Source of the DNA: Gracilinanus agilis
Lineage: Eukaryota
Assembly: GCF_016433145.1 (NCBI RefSeq)
Contig: NC_058136.1
Coordinates: 19,414,854 to 19,478,853 of the forward strand
Length of the DNA: 64,000 bases
Direction of reading: 5' to 3'
Shown: piece after piece, positions 19,725 to 50,200 of the stretch
How positions within the stretch are numbered: the first letter of the stretch is position 1
How the letters are laid out: each line of letters opens with the position of its first letter
The notes under the pieces: generated by a model
What the model saw: the letters and a program-made list of their open reading frames with translations, nothing else
The model's database searches: none
Told to the model about the DNA's origin: nothing
Program-made: the position numbers and the translations under genes

Positions 19725-19892
19725 NNNNNNNNNNNNNNNNNNNNNNNNNNNNNNNNNNNNNNNNNNNNNNNNNNNNNNNNNNNNNNNNNNNNNNNNNNNN
19801 NNNNNNNNNNNNNNNNNNNNNNNNNNNNNNNNNNNNNNNNNNNNNNNNNNNNNNNNNNNNNNNNNNNNNNNNNNNNNNNNNNNNNNNNNNNN
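19725..19892. other. Assembly gap (168 N)
   Basis: Run of N in the sequence. Confidence 1.
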
Positions 19893-20079: not shown

Positions 20080-20706
20080 GGTGCCAGGCGCACTCGAAAT
20101 GCCCGGTCCACCCCGCCCCTTTATTTGGCACATTTTATTAACTTTGAGATCAGTTTGGTTTCAGTTATGTCCAGGTACAACAGATGCCTTTATTTGTCTC
20201 AAGGAAGTGCGGGAGAGTTAAGGGATCAGGAAAGGCAGCAAGAAGATGCTCCTGGAAATGAGTTTTTAAGGAGGACCAGGGGGAGTACGAAAAGGGGATC
20301 GGAAGTGCACCTGGGCTCTCCCTCCCACGCCCTCCAGTAAGGGAACGCCCCCTCCCCAGCTCGGCACCTCCTCCACTACTGGAACTCGAACTGCCCCTCT
20401 CAGAGATTCGCTTAGAGAGCTGACAGGTTGTTACTGGGGAAAGGTCACGGGAGCGCCGCGCGCCTCCGTGCGTGACGTAAGCGCCGTCGCCGTCCTGCCC
20501 CTGACGTCCTCTACGTCGCCGTGCCGCTTGGGTCAGACTGGTCGCAGGTGCTGCCGCCATTTAGCTCGCGCTGTCCGGAGGCTGCCGCTGTCGCGACGTC
20601 TGCTGGTGCCAGGAGCAGGGGAGACACGTGAGCCCCTCTCCGCGACTGGTCACCCCCTGTTTCTTGTAGTCGCACCCCGCCCGCCCGCGCAGTAGCCCCC
20701 GCCGTC
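20080..20706 (+). promoter_or_regulatory. CpG-island promoter and 5' UTR of SSU72
   Basis: Dense CpG in a CpG-poor background. Motifs: GC box ccccgcccc 20111-20119, ETS/GABP CGGAAGTG 20300-20307, CRE-like TGACGTAA 20473-20480 and TGACGTC 20502-20508, YY1 GCCGCCATTT 20553-20562, E-box CACGTG 20625-20630. Confidence 0.85.
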
Positions 20707-21288
20707 ATGCAGTCCTCGCTGCGGGTGGCCGTGGTGTGCTCCAGTAACCAGAACCGGAGCATGGAGGCACACAACATCCTCAGCAAACGAGGGTTCAACG
20801 TAAGGTCCTTTGGCACGGGCACTCACGTGAAGCTGCCGGGCCCAGCACCTGACAAGCCCAACGTGTACGATTTCAAAACCACCTATGACCAAATGTACAA
20901 TGATCTCCTTCGAAAGGACAAAGAGCTCTACACGCAGAACGGGATCCTGCACATGCTGGACCGCAATAGAAGAATCAAGCCGAGGCCGGAGAGATTCCAG
21001 AACTGCAAAGATCTCTTCGACCTCATCCTTACCTGCGAAGAGCGAGTCTATGACCAGGTGGTGGAAGATCTCAATTCCAGAGAGCAAGAGACCTGTCAGC
21101 CGGTGCACGTGATTAACGTGGACATCCAAGACAACCACGAAGAAGCCACCCTAGGCGCCTTTCTCATTTGCGAGCTTTGTCAGTGCATACAGCACACCGA
21201 AGACATGGAGAACGAGATAGACGAGCTGTTGCAGGAGTTTGAGGAGAAAAGTAATCGAACTTTTCTCCACACTGTCTGCTTCTACTGA
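20707..21288 (+). CDS. SSU72: Intronless SSU72 RNA polymerase II CTD phosphatase (193 aa), likely functional retrogene
   Basis: Uninterrupted ATG-TGA ORF with good Kozak (gccgtcATG) and intact catalytic CSSNQNRS and DIQD motifs. It differs from recalled human SSU72 by about 5 substitutions and a 1-residue deletion. No introns, whereas the vertebrate parent gene is multi-exon. Confidence 0.96.
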   Translation: MQSSLRVAVVCSSNQNRSMEAHNILSKRGFNVRSFGTGTHVKLPGPAPDKPNVYDFKTTYDQMYNDLLRKDKELYTQNGILHMLDRNRRIKPRPERFQNCKDLFDLILTCEERVYDQVVEDLNSREQETCQPVHVINVDIQDNHEEATLGAFLICELCQCIQHTEDMENEIDELLQEFEEKSNRTFLHTVCFY

Positions 21289-21666
21289 AGGCCTGATCGG
21301 GTTCGCTGGCCTTAGAGAGTCCAGGGAAGCATGCGGGTCAAGTATTTCTGACCATTCCCATCTTCTCTCCGAGGACCAGCTTCGAACCTTCTTTTTGTTA
21401 ATACTTTTTTTTTTCCTTCGTGGTGTTTATTTTTATGGCAGAATTGCCAAAAAAAAAAAAATACTGTACATATAAAAGGAGAGAGACACGTAAAAAAGTG
21501 GCTTTTTTCCCTATCCCACTTTTCCTTATTATAAGTGGGAGAGTCGTGAGGACTTTTTTTTTTTAATGAAAAAAGTTAATATTTTATTTTTTTCCAGCCT
21601 TTTCATTTTAGGTGTACATTTTTTCCCCCTTGCTGCTTAAATTGGCTGGAGTATACAAAGACTTGA

Positions 21667-21672
21667 ATTAAA
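21667..21672 (+). terminator. Candidate ATTAAA polyadenylation signal for SSU72
   Basis: ATTAAA at the end of a U-rich 3' UTR-like tract that also has a Pumilio element (TGTACATA 21465-21472). Confidence 0.35.
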
Positions 21673-22739
21673 CAGTGGACTAGATAAGAACTTGGAATTA
21701 TCCACCAGGCTATTCTCTGCCTTCAGACCAGAAGAGTTAATTGTGCCCTTGTTCCAAAAATGGGATCCAGTCATCTTGCACTAAGGGAAGGTTGTGGATC
21801 AAAAACCTGGACTCAGGATCAATCCTGAAAAAAGAAACTTGACACTGGGTAGGGGAACAGCAGCAGAACTATCATTTTGACTGACTGTGGTTGGCCCAAC
21901 AGACATTGCCAAGGACCCTGGTCTTCCCCAGGGTTTCTACATCTTACCGAAGTTGCTATTGGACAAATCTGTTCTTGGTGTGCTAGGAAGTTCAGCTCAG
22001 ACTCCAAGCTCACTTTATTGTGGTTGATTTTGTTTTGAGATTTAAAAAAAAAGGTTCCCAGAAGGGGTTTTTTTTTTATTGTTGTTATTTTGTGACTTGA
22101 GAATCTGAGCAGGAGGAGTCAGCTTAGATTCGGGGAAGGTGGAGTGCCTGTTCACAAAAGCTTCCTCATCATCCTGAAGAGTGCCTCCAACTTCCTTGCC
22201 CCTTGATTATTGGAGGGCACAGATGCACAGCTCAGAATGACTTTATTCTGGCTGCAAGTGTCTTTACTTATTTTTAATAACTGTTTACTGTTTGGAGCAA
22301 CAAAGATGCTCCCTTCATGCCAGGAGTAGGATAATTTACTGAAACAATAAAGGTCAAGAAGAGGGCCTTGATTCAAAAGCCTTGGTGCTATACCCAGTTG
22401 GGTGTGGTACATCATGGGGTCTAACTCCCTAACTCTTCCAAAGCCTGCAGAAGAGAATGGGAGAAGCAGTTTTCTGAAGATCCCTGGAAGGGGATGGCAG
22501 TCATGTTTTTTGGCATCCACCTCCCAAAGGTCTCAGATGGGACCTCAGAACTTCTTGTTTTTCCTAATATCTTTTATTGGATCTGACAAATACAACTCAC
22601 CTATTTTCCTGTCTTCAGTGGCAGCCTGTGTTACTTCTTGAGGTAATAAACTCCTGACTTAATATATTAATTAAATAATTTTAAAAAAAGGTCACAGAGC
22701 AAGTATATTTCAGAGGTAGAACTTAAACCTAGGATTTCC

Positions 22740-23080
22740 TGGCTTAGAAGCCAGCTTGATAGCCACTATGCTGTGCCATTGTATATTAAGGTTGGAAAAG
22801 TTAGCCATAGTTGTGAACATAGCCAGGTTGTGAAGGACTTTAAATGCCAAAAGGCTTTGTATTTGATCCTGGAGGTAATAGGGAGCCATTAGAGATTAAT
22901 GAGGAGGAGAAGGACTAAATAAGATGCTACTATTGCAGTCCAGGTGAGAGCTGATGAGGGCCTGAGATAGGCCGATGGTTCTGTGTGTAGTAAAGAGGAT
23001 AGATGGGAGAGATGTTGGGAGATTTTGTACCTGTTTGGATATGAGGGGCAAAGGACAATAAAGAGCTATGAGTGGTAAGA
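22740..23080 (-). mobile_element. L2 fragment
   Basis: gaaggactttaaatgcc...tttgatcctggaggtaatagggagccatt...ctattgcagtccaggtgagag. Confidence 0.7.
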
Positions 23081-43429: not shown

Positions 43430-44394
43430 TCATGCTTCTCTTCTATCATCATCTTCTTCCTCATTGTCACTGTTATCGTTTTCATCACCATCCTCATTAG
43501 TCATCTCACTCTTCTCCTGTTCAATGTACTTCAGATAGAAATGGTCCCTAGGACCGGTCACTACCTAGTTGTCATACTGTGCTCTTATCCTCCTCTTACA
43601 TTTAACGTTCTGTGGGCTATCGCATGGGGGGACAGAAAGAGCTGGGTTTTTAGAACTAAATAAAAATGTTGGGATGCAAGTTCATCTGAAGATTTATCGA
43701 AAGCATTTCCAGGAGGACTAGTGTGGCCGACAGGCAGACGGCGGGGGACGGGGACTGTTCTTACATGACTTTGATTTGTTCTGCTAGGCACTAGGTTTGG
43801 ACAGGCTTCCTCCTTCTATGTAGCTTCAAGATAATGAATATCTGCCATAGTGATATCTAGTCAAAATGTCGTTCTTCAGTTTTATGGCTCCGAGTTATGG
43901 CCAGGCTCTTGTGGGTAGCAATTCTGAATGGGCTAAAAAGCTCGTTTCAGTGCTGTGTATTTGCTGACGTCTTCAGGATACGACGAGATCTCTACTTCAT
44001 AGGCACGGAGTTATTTGCATGTTGTCTCCCTCATCCAGATATGTGCTCCTCGGGGAAAGGGGCCTGGATTTTTGCCTTTGTAGGCTCAGGGCTTTGGAAA
44101 GAAGCGGTTTTCTGTTAGCTCCGAGACAGTGAGCTGCTGCTGATTCATTCTAGCCACCAGGAGGTGTCTTGCTACATATTCGGTAGGTGCTGAATTGTTG
44201 CATCCTGGAGTGGCGTGGTTCCTAGGGTTTCCTTTCATAATCTGTATTGACCAATGTGTCTGGATTCCTTCAGTAATTTCTAGTGCCAATGGCACGGTCA
44301 TGATTTGGCCATCTGTTCAAGGTTGTTGACATATTGTTGGTAGAGTTCATGTGGATGTGGCCCATGGGAGCCTTTAGTCATTTTATAGTCTGTT
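43430..44394 (-). mobile_element. Dong/R4 non-LTR retrotransposon fossil, 3' part (zinc-knuckle region, restriction-like endonuclease, degenerate TGA/TAA tail)
   Basis: Minus-strand TKGSHGPHPHELYQQYVN (KxLHG), LEITEGIQ (PETEG..AIQ), HATPGCNNSAPTEYVARHLLVARMNQQQL, LDITMADIHYL, VRTVPV, HFYLVLKTQLFLSPHAIAHRTLN. Degenerate (CAT/CTT)n at 43430-43510. Confidence 0.85.
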
Positions 44395-44410
44395 TAGAAG
44401 TAAACTGCTT

Positions 44411-44597
44411 AGTAGGGGGCAGCTGGGTGGCTCAGTGGATTGAGAGTCAGGCCTAGAGATGGGAGGTCCTAGGTTCAAATCCTGCCTCAGACACTTCCTG
44501 GCTGTGTGACCCTGGGCAAGTCACTTGACCCCCATTGGCCACCCTTACCACTCTTCCACCAAGGAGCCAATACACAGAAGTGAAGGGTTTAAAAAAA
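44411..44597 (+). mobile_element. Young short-form SINE1 inserted in the R4 fossil
   Basis: 16-bp TSD tagaagtaaactgctt (44395-44410 and 44598-44613). Confidence 0.93.
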
Positions 44598-44639
44598 TAG
44601 AAGTAAACTGCTTTTGGTCACATTTAACATGAATTTATT

Positions 44640-46545
44640 ATATGCTCATCTCTAGCGGGTCGCCCCCTGTGTCACACCCAGTCTCTCACTTATCTTCAAT
44701 CCCTCCCTGTCTACAAGCTGTTTCCCAACTCCTCCATCCTCAATAAACCCTCAAATGATTTTTCCATCCCTACTAGCTGTTGTCCTATATCTCCTCCATT
44801 TTATGGCTATGCCACATGGGAAGGTCAGCTACAATCAATGCCTCCACTTCCTTTCCTCTCTCTTCTTGAATCTCTATAGTCTGGCTTCTGCCCTCACCAT
44901 TCAACAAAAACTACCCTCTCCAAAGTTAGCCATGATCTCTTTGTTGCCTTTTTCAATTTCATCCTACTTGGCCTCTCTGAAGTCTTTGGCACTGTTAAAA
45001 ACAAAAGCCCTTCTTCTCCTTGATACCCTCTTCTTTTTTTATTGAAAATTTTTATTTAATTGATTTAGAATATTTTTCCATGGTTCCATGATTCATGTTC
45101 TTTCCCTTCCTCCCCCCTCCATAGCCAATGAGTAATTCCCCTGGGTTTTACATATGTCGTTGTTGATACCCTCTTCTATCTAGGTTTCCATGACATTACC
45201 CCCTCCTGGGTCTCTTCCTACCTGTCTGACTGCTTTTTCTCAGTTTCCTTTGAGGGATCATCATTCAGGTCATGTTTACTAATGGTAAGCATCTCAAAAG
45301 ATTCTATCTTGGGCCCTCTTCTTCCTCTATACTATTTTTAGACCCTTACCTTCTGTCTTAGAATCGATGCTAAGTTGCAGTTCCAAGGCAGAAGAGTGAT
45401 AAGGGCCAGGCAATTAGGGTGAAGTGACTTGCCCAGGGTCACACAGCTAGGAAGGATCTGCGGCCAGATTTAAACCCAGGTCCTCCTGACTCCAGGACTG
45501 GCTCTCTACCCACTGGACCGCCTAGCTGCCCCACCTATTTCAATTAATGGTCTCATAATCTCTTCAGGTCCAATGCTGATATTTCTCAATCTCCTTATCT
45601 ACCTTTAACCTCTCTTATAACATCCAGGCTCTTCAACATCTTCAGTTGCCTGTTAGACATCTCAGATTGGATATGCTATGGACAGCTTAAACTATTCAAA
45701 AATGGACTCATTATATTCTTCCCCAAATCCTCCCCATCTCTAAGTTCCCCGTTTTTGTCAAGGGCACCAATCACCCCAGCCAGCCAGATTTACAACCTTG
45801 CATCCTCAGCTCCTCACTCTTTTTCAGCCTCTATGTCTAACATCTACTTTGTTGCCCAATTCTCCCATCTCTCGTGTATACCTTCTTCTCTCCTCTCATA
45901 TTGACTCCACCATGATCCAGGCCCTCATTACTTTACACCAGGGCCGTTTTCTTTTCTTTCTTTTTTGGGGAGTCTGCTCCAATAACCTGTTGCTGGTACT
46001 TCCTACCCCTTGTCTCTTAAAATTCCAGTGGATCCCTATTGCCTCTAGAAGAAAATATAAAATCCTGTGTTTCGCATTCAGAGCCCTTTACAACGTGACC
46101 CTCTCCTACCTTTCCAGTCTTCTTAAACTTTACTATCTCCCCTTTCCCCCCCACTTACTCTGTGATCCAGTGACACTGGCTTTCTTGCTGCTCTTTAAAC
46201 AAGAAACTCCATCTCTGGACTCTGGGCATTTTGACAGACTGACCTCCGTTCCTGGAATGTTCTTCCTTTTCCTCTCCATCTCGTAGCTTCCCTGGCTTCT
46301 TTCAAATCCCAGCTGAGAAACTCTTCTTCTACAGAAAGCCCCTCCTGGTCCTCCTCAATGCTGGTGGCTTCCTTCCGTTGATTATTTCCGTTGATTATCC
46401 CGTATACAGCTTGCTTCTATGTGTTTGTTTATATGTTGTCTTCCATTAGACTGGAAGCTTTTGAGGGCAGAGATTATCTTTTGCCTCTCTTTGAATCCCC
46501 AGTGCTTACTTAGCACAGTGCCTGGCACATAGCGGGTGCTTAATA
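44640..46545 (+). mobile_element. L2 (about 1.9 kb) nested in the R4 fossil, itself carrying an L1 tip and a SINE (45335-45532)
   Basis: L2 RT/3' motifs (ctctccaaagttagccatgatctc; agtggatccctattgcctctagaagaaaatataaaatcc; cttagcacagtgcctggcacatagcgggtgcttaataaatgct). Confidence 0.85.
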
Positions 46546-46996
46546 AATGCTTCTTGACATTTTTTTTAAAACCCTCACCTTCCATCTTGGAGTCAATGCT
46601 GTGTATTGGCTCCAAGGCAGAAGAGTGGGAAGGGCTAGGCAATGGGGGTGAAGTGACTTGCCCAGGGTCACCCAGCTGGGAAGTGTCTGAGGCCAGATTT
46701 GAACCCAGGACTTCCTGTCTCTAGGCCTGGCTCTCAATCCACTGAGCTACCCAGCTGGCCCCGTGCTTCTNAATGCTTCTTGACATTTTTTTTAAAACCC
46801 TCACCTTCCATCTTGGAGTCAATGCTGTGTATTGGCTCCAAGGCAGAAGAGTGGGAAGGGCTAGGCAATGGGGGTGAAGTGACTTGCCCAGGGTCACCCA
46901 GCTGGGAAGTGTCTGAGGCCAGATTTGAACCCAGGACCTCCTGTCTCTAGGCCTGGCTCTCAATCCACTGAGCTACCCAGCTGGCCCCGTGCTTCT
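46546..46996 (-). repeat. 226-bp direct duplication of a SINE1-type SINE joined by a single N
   Basis: 46546-46770 and 46772-46996 differ at one position; outer TSD tgcttcttgac (46548-46558 and 46990-47000). Confidence 0.95.
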
Positions 46997-47041
46997 TGAC
47001 TTTTATTATTAGTATTTGATTTTATTAGTATTCACTATTAC

Positions 47042-48265
47042 TCAGTAAAGTGATAGCTGTTTATTCCAAAAATATTTCTGTAAGTTTTTAACCCTCCTAA
47101 TCATTTCCTCAGAGACTATCAATCCTCGTCCTTCTTTTGGATGAGGGAGTATTGGTCTTTCCATGGCATCCTTAGGGTAATGGGCCTCATGTTTCATTAA
47201 TAGTGTGTGGGTTTCTGCTTGGATACTTTCCAAATCTGTTTTGGTCCATTCTACAAATCTGAAAGTATATATTTTGACTGCTGCTGCACAAGTGTTAATT
47301 GCTTTGAATGTGTTCTCCCCGTTGAATTTTGATTCCAAGATGCCAGCGAGTCTCTTGAAATACACAGTCGTGGCTTTCTTCCTGTTATCTTTATGCTTAA
47401 TGTCTCCTCTGGAGGAGACCACAGTATGTGTAAGAATCCCCTTCGTTCCTTGGTTCAATTTGACTTCCAAATTCAAGTTTAAGACGCAGGCAGAAAGTCA
47501 GGAGACACAGAAATTTGAATCTTCCCCATTGGGTGGCTTTTGACCACTAGCATAATTTCTGTGCCTCCATTTATGTCCACAATTTGGAAAATATGGATAA
47601 TTATGCTTCATGGAAGAGAATTAATACAAATAAAGTCAATAAGATACAAAATTCAAGTTTAAAACTGTTAGCCTACATGTTCCCTTGGAATACATTAAAC
47701 ATTTTCTCCTTACTGAGTCCAAATGACATTTTCATATCACTGGAGAAAGATTGCACGGGATGGAGAGGCTTTTCACTGTGTTTTTTCTGGTGAAGCCGAA
47801 TAACTTGGAGTCATCCATGAACATCGAGTGATTAATATGCCGGTTAGGTACAGCACAGACTCCTTTGACTCAGAAACCAGACTCAGTTCTATTTGAGACA
47901 ACGATGGTTTAAAGCTAGGAAAAACCTTAAGTGATTTAAATTGTTTTCTTGAAAATGCCGCATTTGTTAGTGATGGTTCCTAACATTACCATATTGGTGT
48001 TATCTTTTAAAGAGAAAACAATTTTCCATATGCACATGAAATACTCTAATGTCCTTACTATACTCATGGCTATTTTATGTATTTGCAATACAGGAACAGG
48101 CCACAAGTGTGGAGCTGAGCCAGAGGCTCAAAGGCTTTAACGCTGATAAACAGTAAAGGCAGTATAAATAGTATGGCACTTTAGGACAGCTTGTTTAATA
48201 ATTCCTAACTTGAAAATAAAGATGCTCTTTATACCTCTGGGTCATTCGGGGAAAAAAACGCAATT
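47042..48265 (-). mobile_element. Dong/R4 fossil, reverse transcriptase core and thumb
   Basis: In order on the minus strand: IIKQAV..IYTAFTVY/KAFE, SAPHLW..LQIHKI, IVRTLEYFMCIWK, TNKCGIF/Q..L.HLRFFLALN, HINHSMFMDDSKLF (FMDD at 47810-47821), FSSDMKMSFGLSK, EGDSYTYCG, YFKRLAGILESKFNGENTFKAINTCA...ERPILPHPKEGRGL. Confidence 0.92.
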
Positions 48266-48900
48266 CTTCCCTCTTTGAATCCATATTATGTCTTGGTTCC
48301 AAGACAGAAGAGCGGTAAGGGCTAGGCAATGGGGATGAAGTGACTTGCGCAGGGTCACACAGCTAAGAAGTGTCTGAAGTCACATTTGAAGCCAGGACTT
48401 CCCATCTCTAGGCCTGGCTCTCAATCCACTGAGCTACCCAGCCACCCCTCAGATCTTTATGGCATGTTTTTATAGATTTGTTTAAGGTACTATGATTTTT
48501 TGATGTAATCAAGGTCATTCATTTTTACATTTTATAATGTTCTCTCTCTCTTGCTTGGTCTTAAATTCCTTCCTTTCCCTCAGATCTGACGGTATCCTAT
48601 TCTATGTTCACTTAATTTATTTATGATTTCACTCTTTATATTTAATTCATTCATCCATTTTGAATTTATCTTGGTGTAGGGTGTGAGATGCTGATCTAAA
48701 TCTCTCCCACACTATTTTCCGATTTTCCCAGCACTTTTTGTCAGATAGTGAGTTCTTGTCCCCAAAGCTGGGCTCTTTGGGTTTATCACACACTAGCTTG
48801 CTGAGGTCATTTACCCCATGTCTATTCCATCGGTCCACCCTTCGGTGCTATTATTTTTTAAAAAATGATTTTTTTTTCAGATTACATGTTGGTACAATCA
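48266..48900 (-). mobile_element. SINE1-type SINE (48266-48448) and L1 ORF2 fragment (about 48455-48840) nested in the R4 fossil
   Basis: SINE tail and CORE; MDRWNRHGVNDLSKLVCDKPKEPSF is L1 ORF2. Confidence 0.85.
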
Positions 48901-48949
48901 CTTTCTTAAATTTTGCAATCTGTGTTCTCTCCCTCCCTCCAACCTCTCC

Positions 48950-49370
48950 CTGCAGTGATCTAAGCTGTGAATGCTTTGTAGAAAGTACATAAACACATAA
49001 TTGGCCTGTATTTGGAGAGGTCACTGGTGATGCCTTCAGCAAAGAAAGGCAGCATCAAGCAGCTGAGAGGAGGCTGAGAAGATCTTTGCTCTGAAGGAAT
49101 TGGTTCGCCACCAGGATGTACTTGAGCCTCTAATTATGGATCTTCTCCAAGCTTTGCTGCTTTCTGGTTCTGCAGAGAGGCTAAGATTCCAGGCACCTCC
49201 CTTGTCATTCATTATACAAATGGCGGACATACTCAGTTTTGCATTTGAACCAATTTGCGTGTTGTTGCATTGGACTTGTTGCAACCACATGGATTACCTG
49301 AAATTTTCTATGTCTTCTTTTTTTTGGAGGTTCTCTCTCTCCTCTTTTTCCTTACCATCTTCAGAGTCTG
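48950..49370 (-). mobile_element. Dong/R4 fossil, RT domains 0-1
   Basis: EDIENFR*SMW.../QHANWF, NQKAAK/LEKIHN*RLKY..VANQF and TSDLSKYRPIMCLCTFYKAFTA match NFW..IW, WKAPG.DKIHNFWLK and DPSKYRPITCL..IYK. Confidence 0.85.
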
Positions 49371-49625
49371 TGGGTAAGTCACAGTGCTTTGCACTCAAGT
49401 GCTTAATACATGCTTTTTTCACTCATTCATTCACGGGGAATTATTTAGGGCAAGGAAATGTGTTCATCTCCAATAGTCACAGCAAATGGCAGCTTTTAAA
49501 AATGCCTTTGCTTTGGGAGAATTGGTCTGCTAGTTGGATTAGTGCCATCAAAATCAAAAAGGGATTTTCAACATTTCCATTTAAATCTATTCAGCCCCTG
49601 CTCAAAAGAACTTGAGTCCTGGGGA

Positions 49626-50200
49626 TTATTTTTGTCCTCCATTTTGAGAAATAGGTAGGATTTCTGGCACTGCCATTAAGTCAAGATGTTCAGTGGTTTC
49701 AGATGCTTCGGCTTTCTCCTCTTTAGCTTTAAGTTGCTCGTCAATTTTAGCCTTTATTTCATCCAACGTGAGCTTAGGGATGAAGTTCTTCCTTACAGCT
49801 ACTCTGCATTGATCTCCAATATGTTGCACGACGTGGATTTGAGGGTGCCCCTGATAAAAAGTTACGTAAGGCCTTGCCTAGAAGCCTGGTAAATTTGATT
49901 TCTTGTTTAGTCATGTGCCTAATGAAAAGCCTTTATATCTTTGGTGGTTGCCTGCCTCGGGGGTTAGCGTCATCTGTGTAGGAGCATTTCCGACTGGCGG
50001 GGTTTGGGGATTTATGGTTTGTTCTAGCGTCCTTTATCATCTGCTTGTCCCAGATCAGAAAAGGGGCCACCGTTTGCTCCACCGTCCTCTGTGTCAAGAG
50101 GATTGAAGTGCTTGCTGGTGGATCATCATGATGGTTTCAAGGAGGGCCAGCCTGCCCGTCTATGTCAACCCTTCTATTTTTTTTACTCTTAGGAACAATG
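49626..50200 (-). mobile_element. Dong/R4 fossil, N-terminal domain and probable 5' region
   Basis: FYQGHPQIHVVQHIGDQCRVAVRKNFIPKLTLDEIKAKIDEQL matches the recalled R4 N-terminal pattern F...YP...VTEQRIADQRRVI.RN.L.....L..IK..V. Confidence 0.72.

What the first reader, a model, noticed from the sequence alone, without database searches (positions are those of the whole stretch)
20080..21700. Intronless, near-invariant SSU72 with its own CpG-island housekeeping promoter next to ADGRG4 (probable into-X or parent-replacing retrogene)
Seen: an intact 193-aa intronless ORF with catalytic motifs, CpGs retained throughout the CDS, and GABP, CRE, YY1 and Sp1 motifs upstream. Established: SSU72 is the RNAPII CTD Ser5/Ser7 phosphatase and is multi-exon and autosomal in human (1p36, near ATAD3A/TMEM240/MIB2), while ADGRG4 lies in the therian X-conserved region. 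I know of no SSU72 at the eutherian ADGRG4-BRS3 locus. Inference: this is an old retrocopy under strong purifying selection with a broadly active rather than testis-only promoter. It is either a second marsupial SSU72 or an orphan retrogene that replaced its parent. An X-linked copy would be exposed to paternal X inactivation and meiotic sex-chromosome inactivation, the reverse of the usual out-of-X pattern. Caveat: linkage to ADGRG4 crosses the N-gap at 19725-19892.
Basis: partly seen in the sequence, partly recalled or inferred. Interest (0 to 1): 0.78.

Follow-up and report, generated by a model that had tools for sequence, protein, structure and literature searches.

The report
Conserved X-linked SSU72 retrogene in marsupials
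This is a real, working, intron-free second copy of the RNA polymerase II phosphatase gene SSU72 that landed beside ADGRG4 on the marsupial X before the living marsupial orders split. It brought part of its parent's promoter with it, but it did not replace the parent, which is still intact on an autosome of the same opossum.

Summary
Window 20707-21288 (+) is an intact 193-aa full-length Ssu72 with its catalytic motifs, inside a CpG island, about 16 kb downstream of ADGRG4-type exons.

It is a processed retrogene:
- It is colinear with the five spliced exons and the 5' and 3' UTRs of the sugar-glider SSU72.
- It ends in the parental AATAAA plus a short A-run.
- It is flanked by a target-site duplication.

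The window is from Gracilinanus agilis. The N run is a mask, not an assembly gap.

The same insertion lies at the collinear site in Monodelphis, Antechinus, Dromiciops and Trichosurus, on X-sized records. It therefore predates crown marsupials.

In the two didelphids the protein is identical (27 nucleotide differences, all synonymous). The australidelphian orthologues evolve 7-12 times faster but stay open.

A 133-nt CRE-YY1 block upstream of the ATG came from the parent and is still 81% identical to it.

The parent-replacing reading is refuted. G. agilis keeps a spliced SSU72 (194-aa gene call; exons 3-5 checked and intact) beside TMEM240 and ATAD3 on a 683-Mb autosome.

The scan had not noted SSU72 before. 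This is a solid new member of a known kind.

The parts
234..572 (+). ADGRG4-type exon (TM5-TM7 part of the 7TM domain)
   Evidence: Best PDB match is ADGRG4 7wuj, E 1e-37, 132.7 bits, against ADGRG2 115 bits.
4008..4193 (+). Open stretch holding the last 7TM and C-tail exon of the ADGRG4-type gene
   Evidence: Best PDB match is ADGRG4 7wuj, E 2e-11.
19725..19892 (.). Masked stretch (168 N), not an assembly gap
   Evidence: The window is 100% identical to L001 on both sides. L001 has 168 bases and no N in that place. The letters were not read.
20200..21400 (.). CpG island covering the promoter, 5'UTR and coding sequence
   Evidence: CpG observed/expected 0.72-1.06 against <0.4 in the flanks. 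Monodelphis shows the same profile.
20300..20307 (+). ETS/GABP-type motif CGGAAGTG in host-derived DNA upstream of the insertion
   Evidence: Identical in Monodelphis.
20440..20454 (+). 5' copy of the target-site duplication (AAAGGTCACGGGAGC)
   Evidence: 17 of 5000 shuffles reach the observed match. The same junction is seen in Trichosurus and Dromiciops.
20455..22686 (+). Body of the processed SSU72 retrocopy (carried 5' region, coding sequence, 3'UTR, poly(A) remnant)
   Evidence: Colinear with the Petaurus spliced exons and UTRs.
20468..20600 (+). Parent-derived promoter-proximal block: CRE TGACGTAA (20473), TGACGTCC (20502), YY1-type GCCGCCATTT (20553)
   Evidence: 81% identical without gaps to the Petaurus parent, 97% to Monodelphis, and only 47-54% to the australidelphian X orthologues.
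20707..21288 (+). SSU72 coding sequence, 193 codons plus stop, no introns
   Evidence: The parental exon junctions fall at about 20783, 20929, 21067 and 21186.
21289..22682 (+). 3'UTR inherited from the parental mRNA, with AATAAA at 22645-22650
   Evidence: 72.7% identical over about 1.5 kb to the Petaurus last exon and 3'UTR. Homology ends just after the signal.
22683..22689 (+). Residual poly(A) run (A7 here, A8 in Monodelphis). Its last three A overlap the 3' target-site duplication copy
22687..22700 (+). 3' copy of the target-site duplication (AAAGGTCACAGAGC)
22701..22800 (+). Old SINE-like host sequence that continues the sequence interrupted at 20454. MIR-core-like by my recollection only
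   Evidence: Read by eye. A local search for other copies in the window was not significant.

Best explanation
Shown:
- An SSU72 mRNA was reverse-transcribed and inserted about 16 kb downstream of ADGRG4, into an old SINE, before the living marsupial orders diverged.
- The copy carried the whole coding sequence, the 1.4-kb 3'UTR with its AATAAA, and about 250 nt upstream of the ATG.
- That upstream stretch holds the parent's CRE and YY1 promoter-proximal elements.
- The copy sits in a CpG island that also extends about 250 bp into host DNA with an ETS/GABP site.
- It encodes a catalytically complete Ssu72 (the Pol II CTD Ser5/Ser7 phosphatase fold) that differs from the parental protein at five places: P2Q, loss of P5, S31N, K88R and S182N.
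- The autosomal spliced parent still exists in the same genome, so this is a second SSU72 and not a replacement.
- In didelphids the copy evolves as slowly as the parent. In australidelphians the orthologous copy is kept open but evolves 7-12 times faster and has lost most of the carried promoter block.

Inferred:
- The gene is transcribed from the island, using the carried CRE/YY1 block together with host-derived upstream sites.
- The records that hold it are X chromosomes.
- In didelphids it supplies SSU72 activity equivalent to the parent's.
For: - Ssu72 identity and motifs.
- Intron loss: the window matches the Petaurus exons at L003 10001-10080, 25954-26097, 51216-51355, 52854-52972 and 55149-55250, which have GT-AG introns over 45 kb. 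All four introns are absent here.
- The 3'UTR homology ends at the AATAAA plus A-run.
- Target-site duplication: (17 of 5000 shuffles reach the observed match).
- The carried 5' block is 81% identical to the parent and 97% identical between the two didelphids, against about 88% local background.
- Orthology: both flanks are collinear in Monodelphis (about 88% identity), Antechinus, Dromiciops and Trichosurus. The same 5' junction is seen in Trichosurus and Dromiciops.
- Selection in didelphids: G. agilis against Monodelphis shows 27 differences, all synonymous (dS about 0.27).
- Selection in australidelphians: dN/dS among the X copies is 0.11-0.13. They form a 97/97-supported clade with branches of 0.11-0.19, against 0.015 for the didelphid copy.
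- Parent retained: in L009 from the window's own assembly the gene table reads SSU72 (194-aa product), then TMEM240, then ATAD3. Exons 3-5 are open, have AG/GT splice sites, and are identical in protein to the Petaurus parent.
- X linkage: the records measure 82, 89, 87, 85 and 61 Mb, against 445-700 Mb for other marsupial records, and ADGRG4 is the neighbour.
Against: - The run index lists only 'RNA?' guesses for a related organism.
- The transcription start site is unmapped, so actual use of the carried block is inferred from its conservation.
- Exons 1-2 of the G. agilis parent lie outside the fetched locus. Their intactness rests on the 194-aa gene call.
- Synonymous distance from the X copy to the parent (dS 1.0-2.2) is far larger than parent to parent across orders (0.32). 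Either the insertion is much older than the crown group or the copy's silent sites evolve faster. This is unresolved.
- The didelphid copy shares no derived amino acid with its australidelphian orthologues.
- That the records are X chromosomes is inferred from their size and from the ADGRG4 neighbour, not read from an annotation.
Confidence: 0.85

Rival explanations
1. Orphan retrogene: the X copy replaced the autosomal SSU72 in didelphids, and that explains its near-invariance.
For: The rate of protein change is like the parent's. The parental promoter block is kept only in didelphids. RNF113A is a precedent for an X-linked orphan retrogene (PMC4772013).
Against: G. agilis has a called 194-aa spliced SSU72 next to TMEM240 and ATAD3 on CM028237.1. 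Exons 3-5 are open, have intact splice sites, and show 0 nonsynonymous against 17 synonymous differences from the Petaurus parent.
Confidence: 0.03
2. The didelphid copy was refreshed after the order split. Either a second retroposition or an RNA-templated conversion from the didelphid parent overwrote an older, diverged copy at the same site.
For: The didelphid copy shares none of the derived residues of the australidelphian X clade. It keeps the full 3'UTR and a parent-like 5' block that the others have lost.
Against: The 5' junction and duplicated target are the same in Trichosurus and Dromiciops. The copy's silent-site distance to its own genome's parent is as large as its distance to the Petaurus parent (52 against 57 differences in 361 nt). 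A post-split refresh would make the former clearly smaller. A single insertion followed by unequal constraint explains everything.
Confidence: 0.04
3. A young processed pseudogene that has not yet decayed, or a cDNA or assembly artefact.
For: Intronless and nearly identical in protein to canonical SSU72.
Against: It is present at the collinear site in five independent assemblies of four orders. Silent sites are saturated against the parent. All 27 didelphid differences are synonymous.
Confidence: 0.01
4. A functional but testis-restricted retrogene whose CpG island is only a leftover of the parental 5' end.
For: Most retrogenes start out with testis expression (PMC4772013). No expression data could be obtained here.
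Against: The island has kept observed/expected about 1 for more than 80 My and extends into host DNA. The CRE-YY1 block is more conserved than its surroundings. Protein constraint equals that of the housekeeping parent. X linkage would expose a meiotic or post-meiotic gene to sex-chromosome inactivation.
Confidence: 0.12

Closest known systems
RNF113A, the X-linked mammalian orphan retrogene (Carelli et al. 2016, PMC4772013)
   Same: An autosomal housekeeping gene was retroposed onto what is now the therian X. The copy is kept under strong constraint and is associated with a CpG-island promoter.
   Different: The RNF113 parent was lost. Here the spliced SSU72 parent is retained in the same genome, so this is a duplicate and not a replacement.
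Retrogenes that carried their parent's core promoter (Okamura and Nakai 2008, PMC2386082; about 3% of expressed retrocopies in Carelli et al. 2016)
   Same: Sequence upstream of the ATG is homologous to the parent's promoter-proximal region and holds the same CRE and YY1 sites.
   Different: The start site is not mapped here, so use of the carried block is inferred. The island also recruits about 250 bp of host DNA. The conservation spans more than 80 My, far older than the cases those papers could detect.
Primate SSU72L/SSU72P retrocopy family (HGNC renamed SSU72P2 to SSU72L2; PMC12807706) and the many eutherian 'SSU72-like' genes listed
   Same: Intronless SSU72-derived genes with open frames. 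SSU72 is a prolific source of retrocopies.
   Different: Independent insertions at other loci. The felid copy L010 shares no flank or UTR homology with the marsupial locus. Those copies are 76-89% identical to canonical SSU72, against 97% here.
Canonical spliced SSU72 (Pol II CTD Ser5/Ser7 phosphatase; PDB 3o2q/3o2s)
   Same: 97% identical protein, full-length domain, and the same catalytic Cys, Arg and Asp loops.
   Different: No introns, a different chromosome, and five private residue changes at the N-terminus and at S31N, K88R and S182N.

Membership tests
Ssu72 phosphatase family (PF04722) | Full-length match to the family profile | tested here: met
   E 1.2e-96, residues 5-193 against profile 1-189 of 189.
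Ssu72 phosphatase family (PF04722) | Catalytic CX5R(S) loop and general-acid Asp loop | tested here: met
   VCSSNQNRS and DIQDN are present. These columns are invariant in 18 sequences.
Ssu72 phosphatase family (PF04722) | CTD phosphatase activity | not testable with these tools
   Needs an enzyme assay.
L1-type processed retrocopy | All parental introns are absent, with exact colinearity to the spliced mRNA including its UTRs | tested here: met
   Four GT-AG introns of the Petaurus gene are missing. The 5' region and the 1.4-kb 3'UTR are colinear.
L1-type processed retrocopy | Poly(A) tract at the 3' end, after the parental polyadenylation signal | tested here: met
   AATAAA at 22645, then A7 at 22683-22689 (A8 in Monodelphis). 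Homology to the parent stops there.
L1-type processed retrocopy | Target-site duplication at both ends | tested here: met
   AAAGGTCACGGGAGC and AAAGGTCACAGAGC. 17 of 5000 shuffles reach the match.
L1-type processed retrocopy | A locus different from the parent's | tested here: met
   The parent lies beside TMEM240 and ATAD3 on a 683.5-Mb record. The copy lies beside ADGRG4 on an 82-Mb record.
Functional retrogene | Open frame kept across species, with dN/dS far below 1 | tested here: met
   0 nonsynonymous against 26-27 synonymous differences between the didelphids. dN/dS is 0.11-0.13 among the australidelphian orthologues.
Functional retrogene | Transcription | tested here: inconclusive
There are only unverified 'RNA?' holders in a relative.
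Orphan (parent-replacing) retrogene | No functional parent in the same lineage | tested here: not met
   A spliced SSU72 with a 194-aa product is called in G. agilis. Exons 3-5 are intact.
Promoter-inheriting retrogene | The retrocopy's upstream region is homologous to the parental promoter-proximal region | tested here: met
   A 133-nt CRE-YY1 block is 81% identical to the Petaurus parent without gaps.
Promoter-inheriting retrogene | The transcription start lies within or just downstream of the inherited block | not testable with these tools
   Needs CAGE or 5' RACE.
X-linked gene | Located on the X chromosome | tested here: inconclusive
   Inferred from record sizes (61-89 Mb against 445-700 Mb) and from the ADGRG4 neighbour. 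No chromosome name was available.

The most novel reading that the evidence does not exclude
In didelphids the X-linked copy may be a co-equal, or even the main, somatic source of SSU72. It kept the parent's CRE-YY1 promoter block and evolves at the parental rate, while its australidelphian orthologues drifted toward a specialised role. This would be a functional take-over in progress. It would put part of an essential Pol II phosphatase's dosage under paternal X inactivation and meiotic sex-chromosome silencing. The very large silent-site distance to the parent also leaves open an origin well before crown marsupials.
Probability: 0.2. Interest if true: 0.55.

Novelty: new member of a known kind. 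Interest (0 to 1): 0.38.

Why it matters
This is a clean, datable example of traffic onto the X, with three useful features:
- A housekeeping gene copy has survived more than 80 My.
- It carried its parent's promoter-proximal elements with it.
- Within one clade it shows two outcomes from one insertion: parent-like constraint in American opossums and faster change in Australasian lineages.

It offers a natural experiment on how retrogenes acquire broad promoters. It also bears on how duplicated dosage of an essential transcription factor is handled on a chromosome subject to paternal X inactivation and meiotic silencing. It does not overturn anything: the parent is retained, and retrogene gain on the X is a known pattern.

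Tried and rejected
There is therefore no read evidence on expression or paralogues. I also treated the whole coding sequence as off limits for search tools.
- Cluster listings for the SSU72 clusters were heterogeneous mixtures of fragments and did not reveal a didelphid parent.
- A TMEM240 anchor taken from a fish fusion protein found only itself. The same idea using the Petaurus TMEM240 exon worked.
- The second Monodelphis SSU72-like protein (P0119) has no contig on record.
- No supplementary tables are held for Potrzebowski 2008 or Carelli 2016. No paper in the library links SSU72 with marsupials or retrogenes.
- I tried to confirm the SINE identity of the target site from other copies in the window. 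The result was not significant, so 'MIR-like' rests on my memory only.
- The felid X-sized SSU72-like locus (L010) shows no homology to the marsupial flanks or UTRs. It gives no evidence for a therian-wide origin, but this is not a real test.
- Earlier-findings look-ups for SSU72, TMEM240 and MIB2 were blank.
Exons were compared one by one in local scripts, and codons split by a junction were left out.
Full report
**What is there**

The ORF at 20707-21288 (+) is intact and 193 codons long. It matches the Pfam Ssu72 profile end to end (E 1e-96). It is 186/191 identical to the solved human enzyme, with the Cys-X5-Arg loop and the Asp loop in place.

The ORF lies in a CpG island at about 20200-21400 with observed/expected 0.72-1.06. 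Both flanks are below 0.4.

- ETS/GABP: 20300
- CRE: 20473 and 20502
- YY1-type: 20553
- GC boxes: 20111 and 20675

Upstream on the same strand, exons at 234-572 and 4008-4193 match ADGRG4 better than ADGRG2.

**Source and the N run**

An exact look-up of the protein found it in two NCBI assemblies. The window is 100% identical to GCA_016433145.1 record CM028241.1 (82 Mb), which I take to be Gracilinanus agilis. That name comes from my own recollection, and it fits the TMEM240 hit labelled with this species from the same assembly.

The 168 N at 19725-19892 correspond to 168 non-N bases in the public record. They are therefore a mask and not a gap. Linkage to ADGRG4 is thus not in doubt.

**It is a processed retrocopy**

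The sugar glider (Petaurus) has a spliced SSU72 of five coding exons spread over 45 kb, with TMEM240 4 kb downstream. The evidence that the window gene derives from such an mRNA:
- The window is colinear with those exons one after another. The junctions fall at about 20783, 20929, 21067 and 21186, and none of the four GT-AG introns is present.
- Homology continues through about 1.4 kb of 3'UTR. It stops right after a shared AATAAA (22645), where the window has an A-run (A7 here, A8 in Monodelphis).
- Homology also extends about 250 nt upstream of the ATG.
- Just outside the two ends lie AAAGGTCACGGGAGC (20440-20454) and AAAGGTCACAGAGC (22687-22700). I read these as a target-site duplication. 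17 of 5000 shuffles reach this match.
- The interrupted host sequence looks like the core of an old MIR-type SINE. That is my recollection only; a local check was not significant.

**Age and orthology**

Intronless copies sit at the collinear site in four other species:

| Species | Locus | Record size |
|---|---|---|
| Monodelphis | L002 | 89 Mb |
| Antechinus | L004 | 87 Mb |
| Dromiciops | L005 | 85 Mb |
| Trichosurus | L006 | 61 Mb |

- Both flanks align to the window in all four.
- The same 5' junction is recognisable in Trichosurus and Dromiciops.
- The australidelphian copies share a 13-bp deletion in the 5' region. They also lack about 700 bp of the 3'UTR end.

One insertion before the crown-marsupial split explains all of this. 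The record sizes, together with the ADGRG4 neighbour, point to the X chromosome. This is an inference.

**Selection**

- G. agilis and Monodelphis encode the identical protein. All 27 nucleotide differences are synonymous (dS about 0.27).
- Against the parental protein the didelphid copy differs only by P2Q, loss of P5, S31N, K88R and S182N.
- The australidelphian X copies form a well-supported clade (97/97). Their branches are 7-12 times longer, but their frames are open and dN/dS is 0.11-0.13.

**Promoter**

The 133-nt block at 20468-20600, which holds the CRE and YY1 sites, shows this pattern of identity:

| Comparison with the G. agilis X copy | Identity |
|---|---|
| Monodelphis X copy | 97% (local background about 88%) |
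| Petaurus parent | 81%, no gaps |
| Australidelphian X orthologues | 47-54% |

Part of the parental core promoter was therefore transcribed, carried along and kept. This is the mechanism described by Okamura and Nakai (PMC2386082) and by Carelli et al. (PMC4772013).

Two intron-free SSU72 contigs from unidentified non-marsupial amniotes also run more than 250 nt upstream of the ATG, through a YY1 motif. This is weak support that SSU72 transcripts can start that far upstream.

The island extends a further 250 bp or so into host DNA with a conserved ETS site.

**The parent is not lost**

I used a Petaurus TMEM240 exon as an anchor. The protein search returned TMEM240 of Gracilinanus agilis on the 683.5-Mb record CM028237.1 of the window's own assembly.

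- The gene table of that locus reads SSU72 (194-aa product, Pfam Ssu72), then TMEM240, then ATAD3.
- SSU72 exons 3, 4 and 5 lie at L009 3914-4053, 5556-5674 and 8311-8412.
- Those exons have AG/GT splice sites and open frames. Their protein sequence is identical to the Petaurus parent.
- Exons 1-2 lie beyond the fetched stretch, so their state rests on the 194-aa gene call.

The orphan reading is therefore refuted. This is a second SSU72.

**An unresolved point**

Over exons 3-5 the two parents differ at 17 of 361 nt (dS 0.32). The X copy differs from either parent at 52-57 nt (dS 1.0-2.2). The two didelphid X copies alone reach dS 0.28. Either the insertion is much older than the crown group, or silent sites of the copy evolve about three times faster than the parent's, or both. 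GC3 is 0.67-0.70 in the didelphid copies against 0.53-0.57 in the parents.

A felid SSU72-like locus on an X-sized record shows no homology to the marsupial site. This does not test a therian origin.

**Expression**

The run index found the window's DNA in one run of the same organism. It found smaller shares in a relative, including nine runs guessed to be RNA from six studies.

From then on I worked beside those places. Later comparisons used other loci, non-coding parts of the window, or local scripts.

Transcription is thus inferred from three things: the maintained CpG island, the conserved promoter block, and purifying selection.

Parental exons were compared exon by exon, and split codons were left out.
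- Human entries that the tools listed (P0003, P0236) were not used further.

**Verdict**

It is wrong on the more exciting alternative of parent replacement.

The literature library holds no description of this marsupial gene. The scan had no earlier SSU72 note. Public annotations already carry the protein. It is a new member of a known kind, and I give it moderate interest for two things: the carried promoter, and the contrast between didelphids and australidelphians.

Noticed in passing
window 19725-19892: The N run is a deliberate mask. The public record of the same assembly has 168 ordinary bases there, so there is no assembly gap between ADGRG4 and SSU72. The letters were not read.
   Followed up: yes
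L001 (window 10707-31288): The gene table of the G. agilis record lists a 646-aa EMP70/TM9SF-type gene model on the + strand spanning the whole 20.6-kb locus, with the SSU72 gene nested inside it. No such model appears in Monodelphis, and I saw no TM9SF-like open stretch in the window. It may be a spurious spliced model.
   Followed up: no
P0076, P0086 (Trichosurus, 445-Mb record); P0088 (Dromiciops, 701 Mb); P0123 (Sarcophilus, 690 Mb); P0044 (Vombatus); P0119 (Monodelphis): Marsupials carry several further intact SSU72-like proteins of about 194 aa, 76-86% identical to the window protein, on autosome-sized records. The Monodelphis protein P0119 shares the S31N state with the didelphid X copy, which hints that it was copied from the X gene. 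It has no contig on record.
   Followed up: partly
L004, L005, L006 (australidelphian orthologues): The australidelphian X copies share a 13-bp deletion in the carried 5' region and lack about 700 bp of the 3'UTR end with the poly(A) site. They still keep a weaker CpG island (o/e about 0.7) and the GCCATTTT core of the YY1 site.
   Followed up: partly
L009 3914-8412 against window 20928-21288: Silent-site distance between the two spliced parents across orders (dS 0.32) is about the same as between the two didelphid X copies (0.28), which split far more recently. Either the parental exons are unusually constrained at silent sites, or the retrocopy mutates faster. GC3 is higher in the didelphid copies (0.67-0.70) than in the parents (0.53-0.57).
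   Followed up: partly
L003 52972 onward (Petaurus): The annotated Petaurus isoform X1 (P0070) reads through the exon 4 donor into an alternative C-terminus. The canonical last exon is intact at L003 55149-55250.
   Followed up: partly
window 22143-22742: The distal 3'UTR is 96-100% identical between G. agilis and Monodelphis, against a background of about 88%. It is also alignable to the Petaurus parent, which suggests conserved regulatory elements in the SSU72 3'UTR.
   Followed up: no
window 43430-50200 and 4170-4810: Other first-reader notes on this window: a fossil Dong/R4-type retrotransposon, and an antisense 135-codon ORF in an ADGRG4 intron. I examined neither.
   Followed up: no
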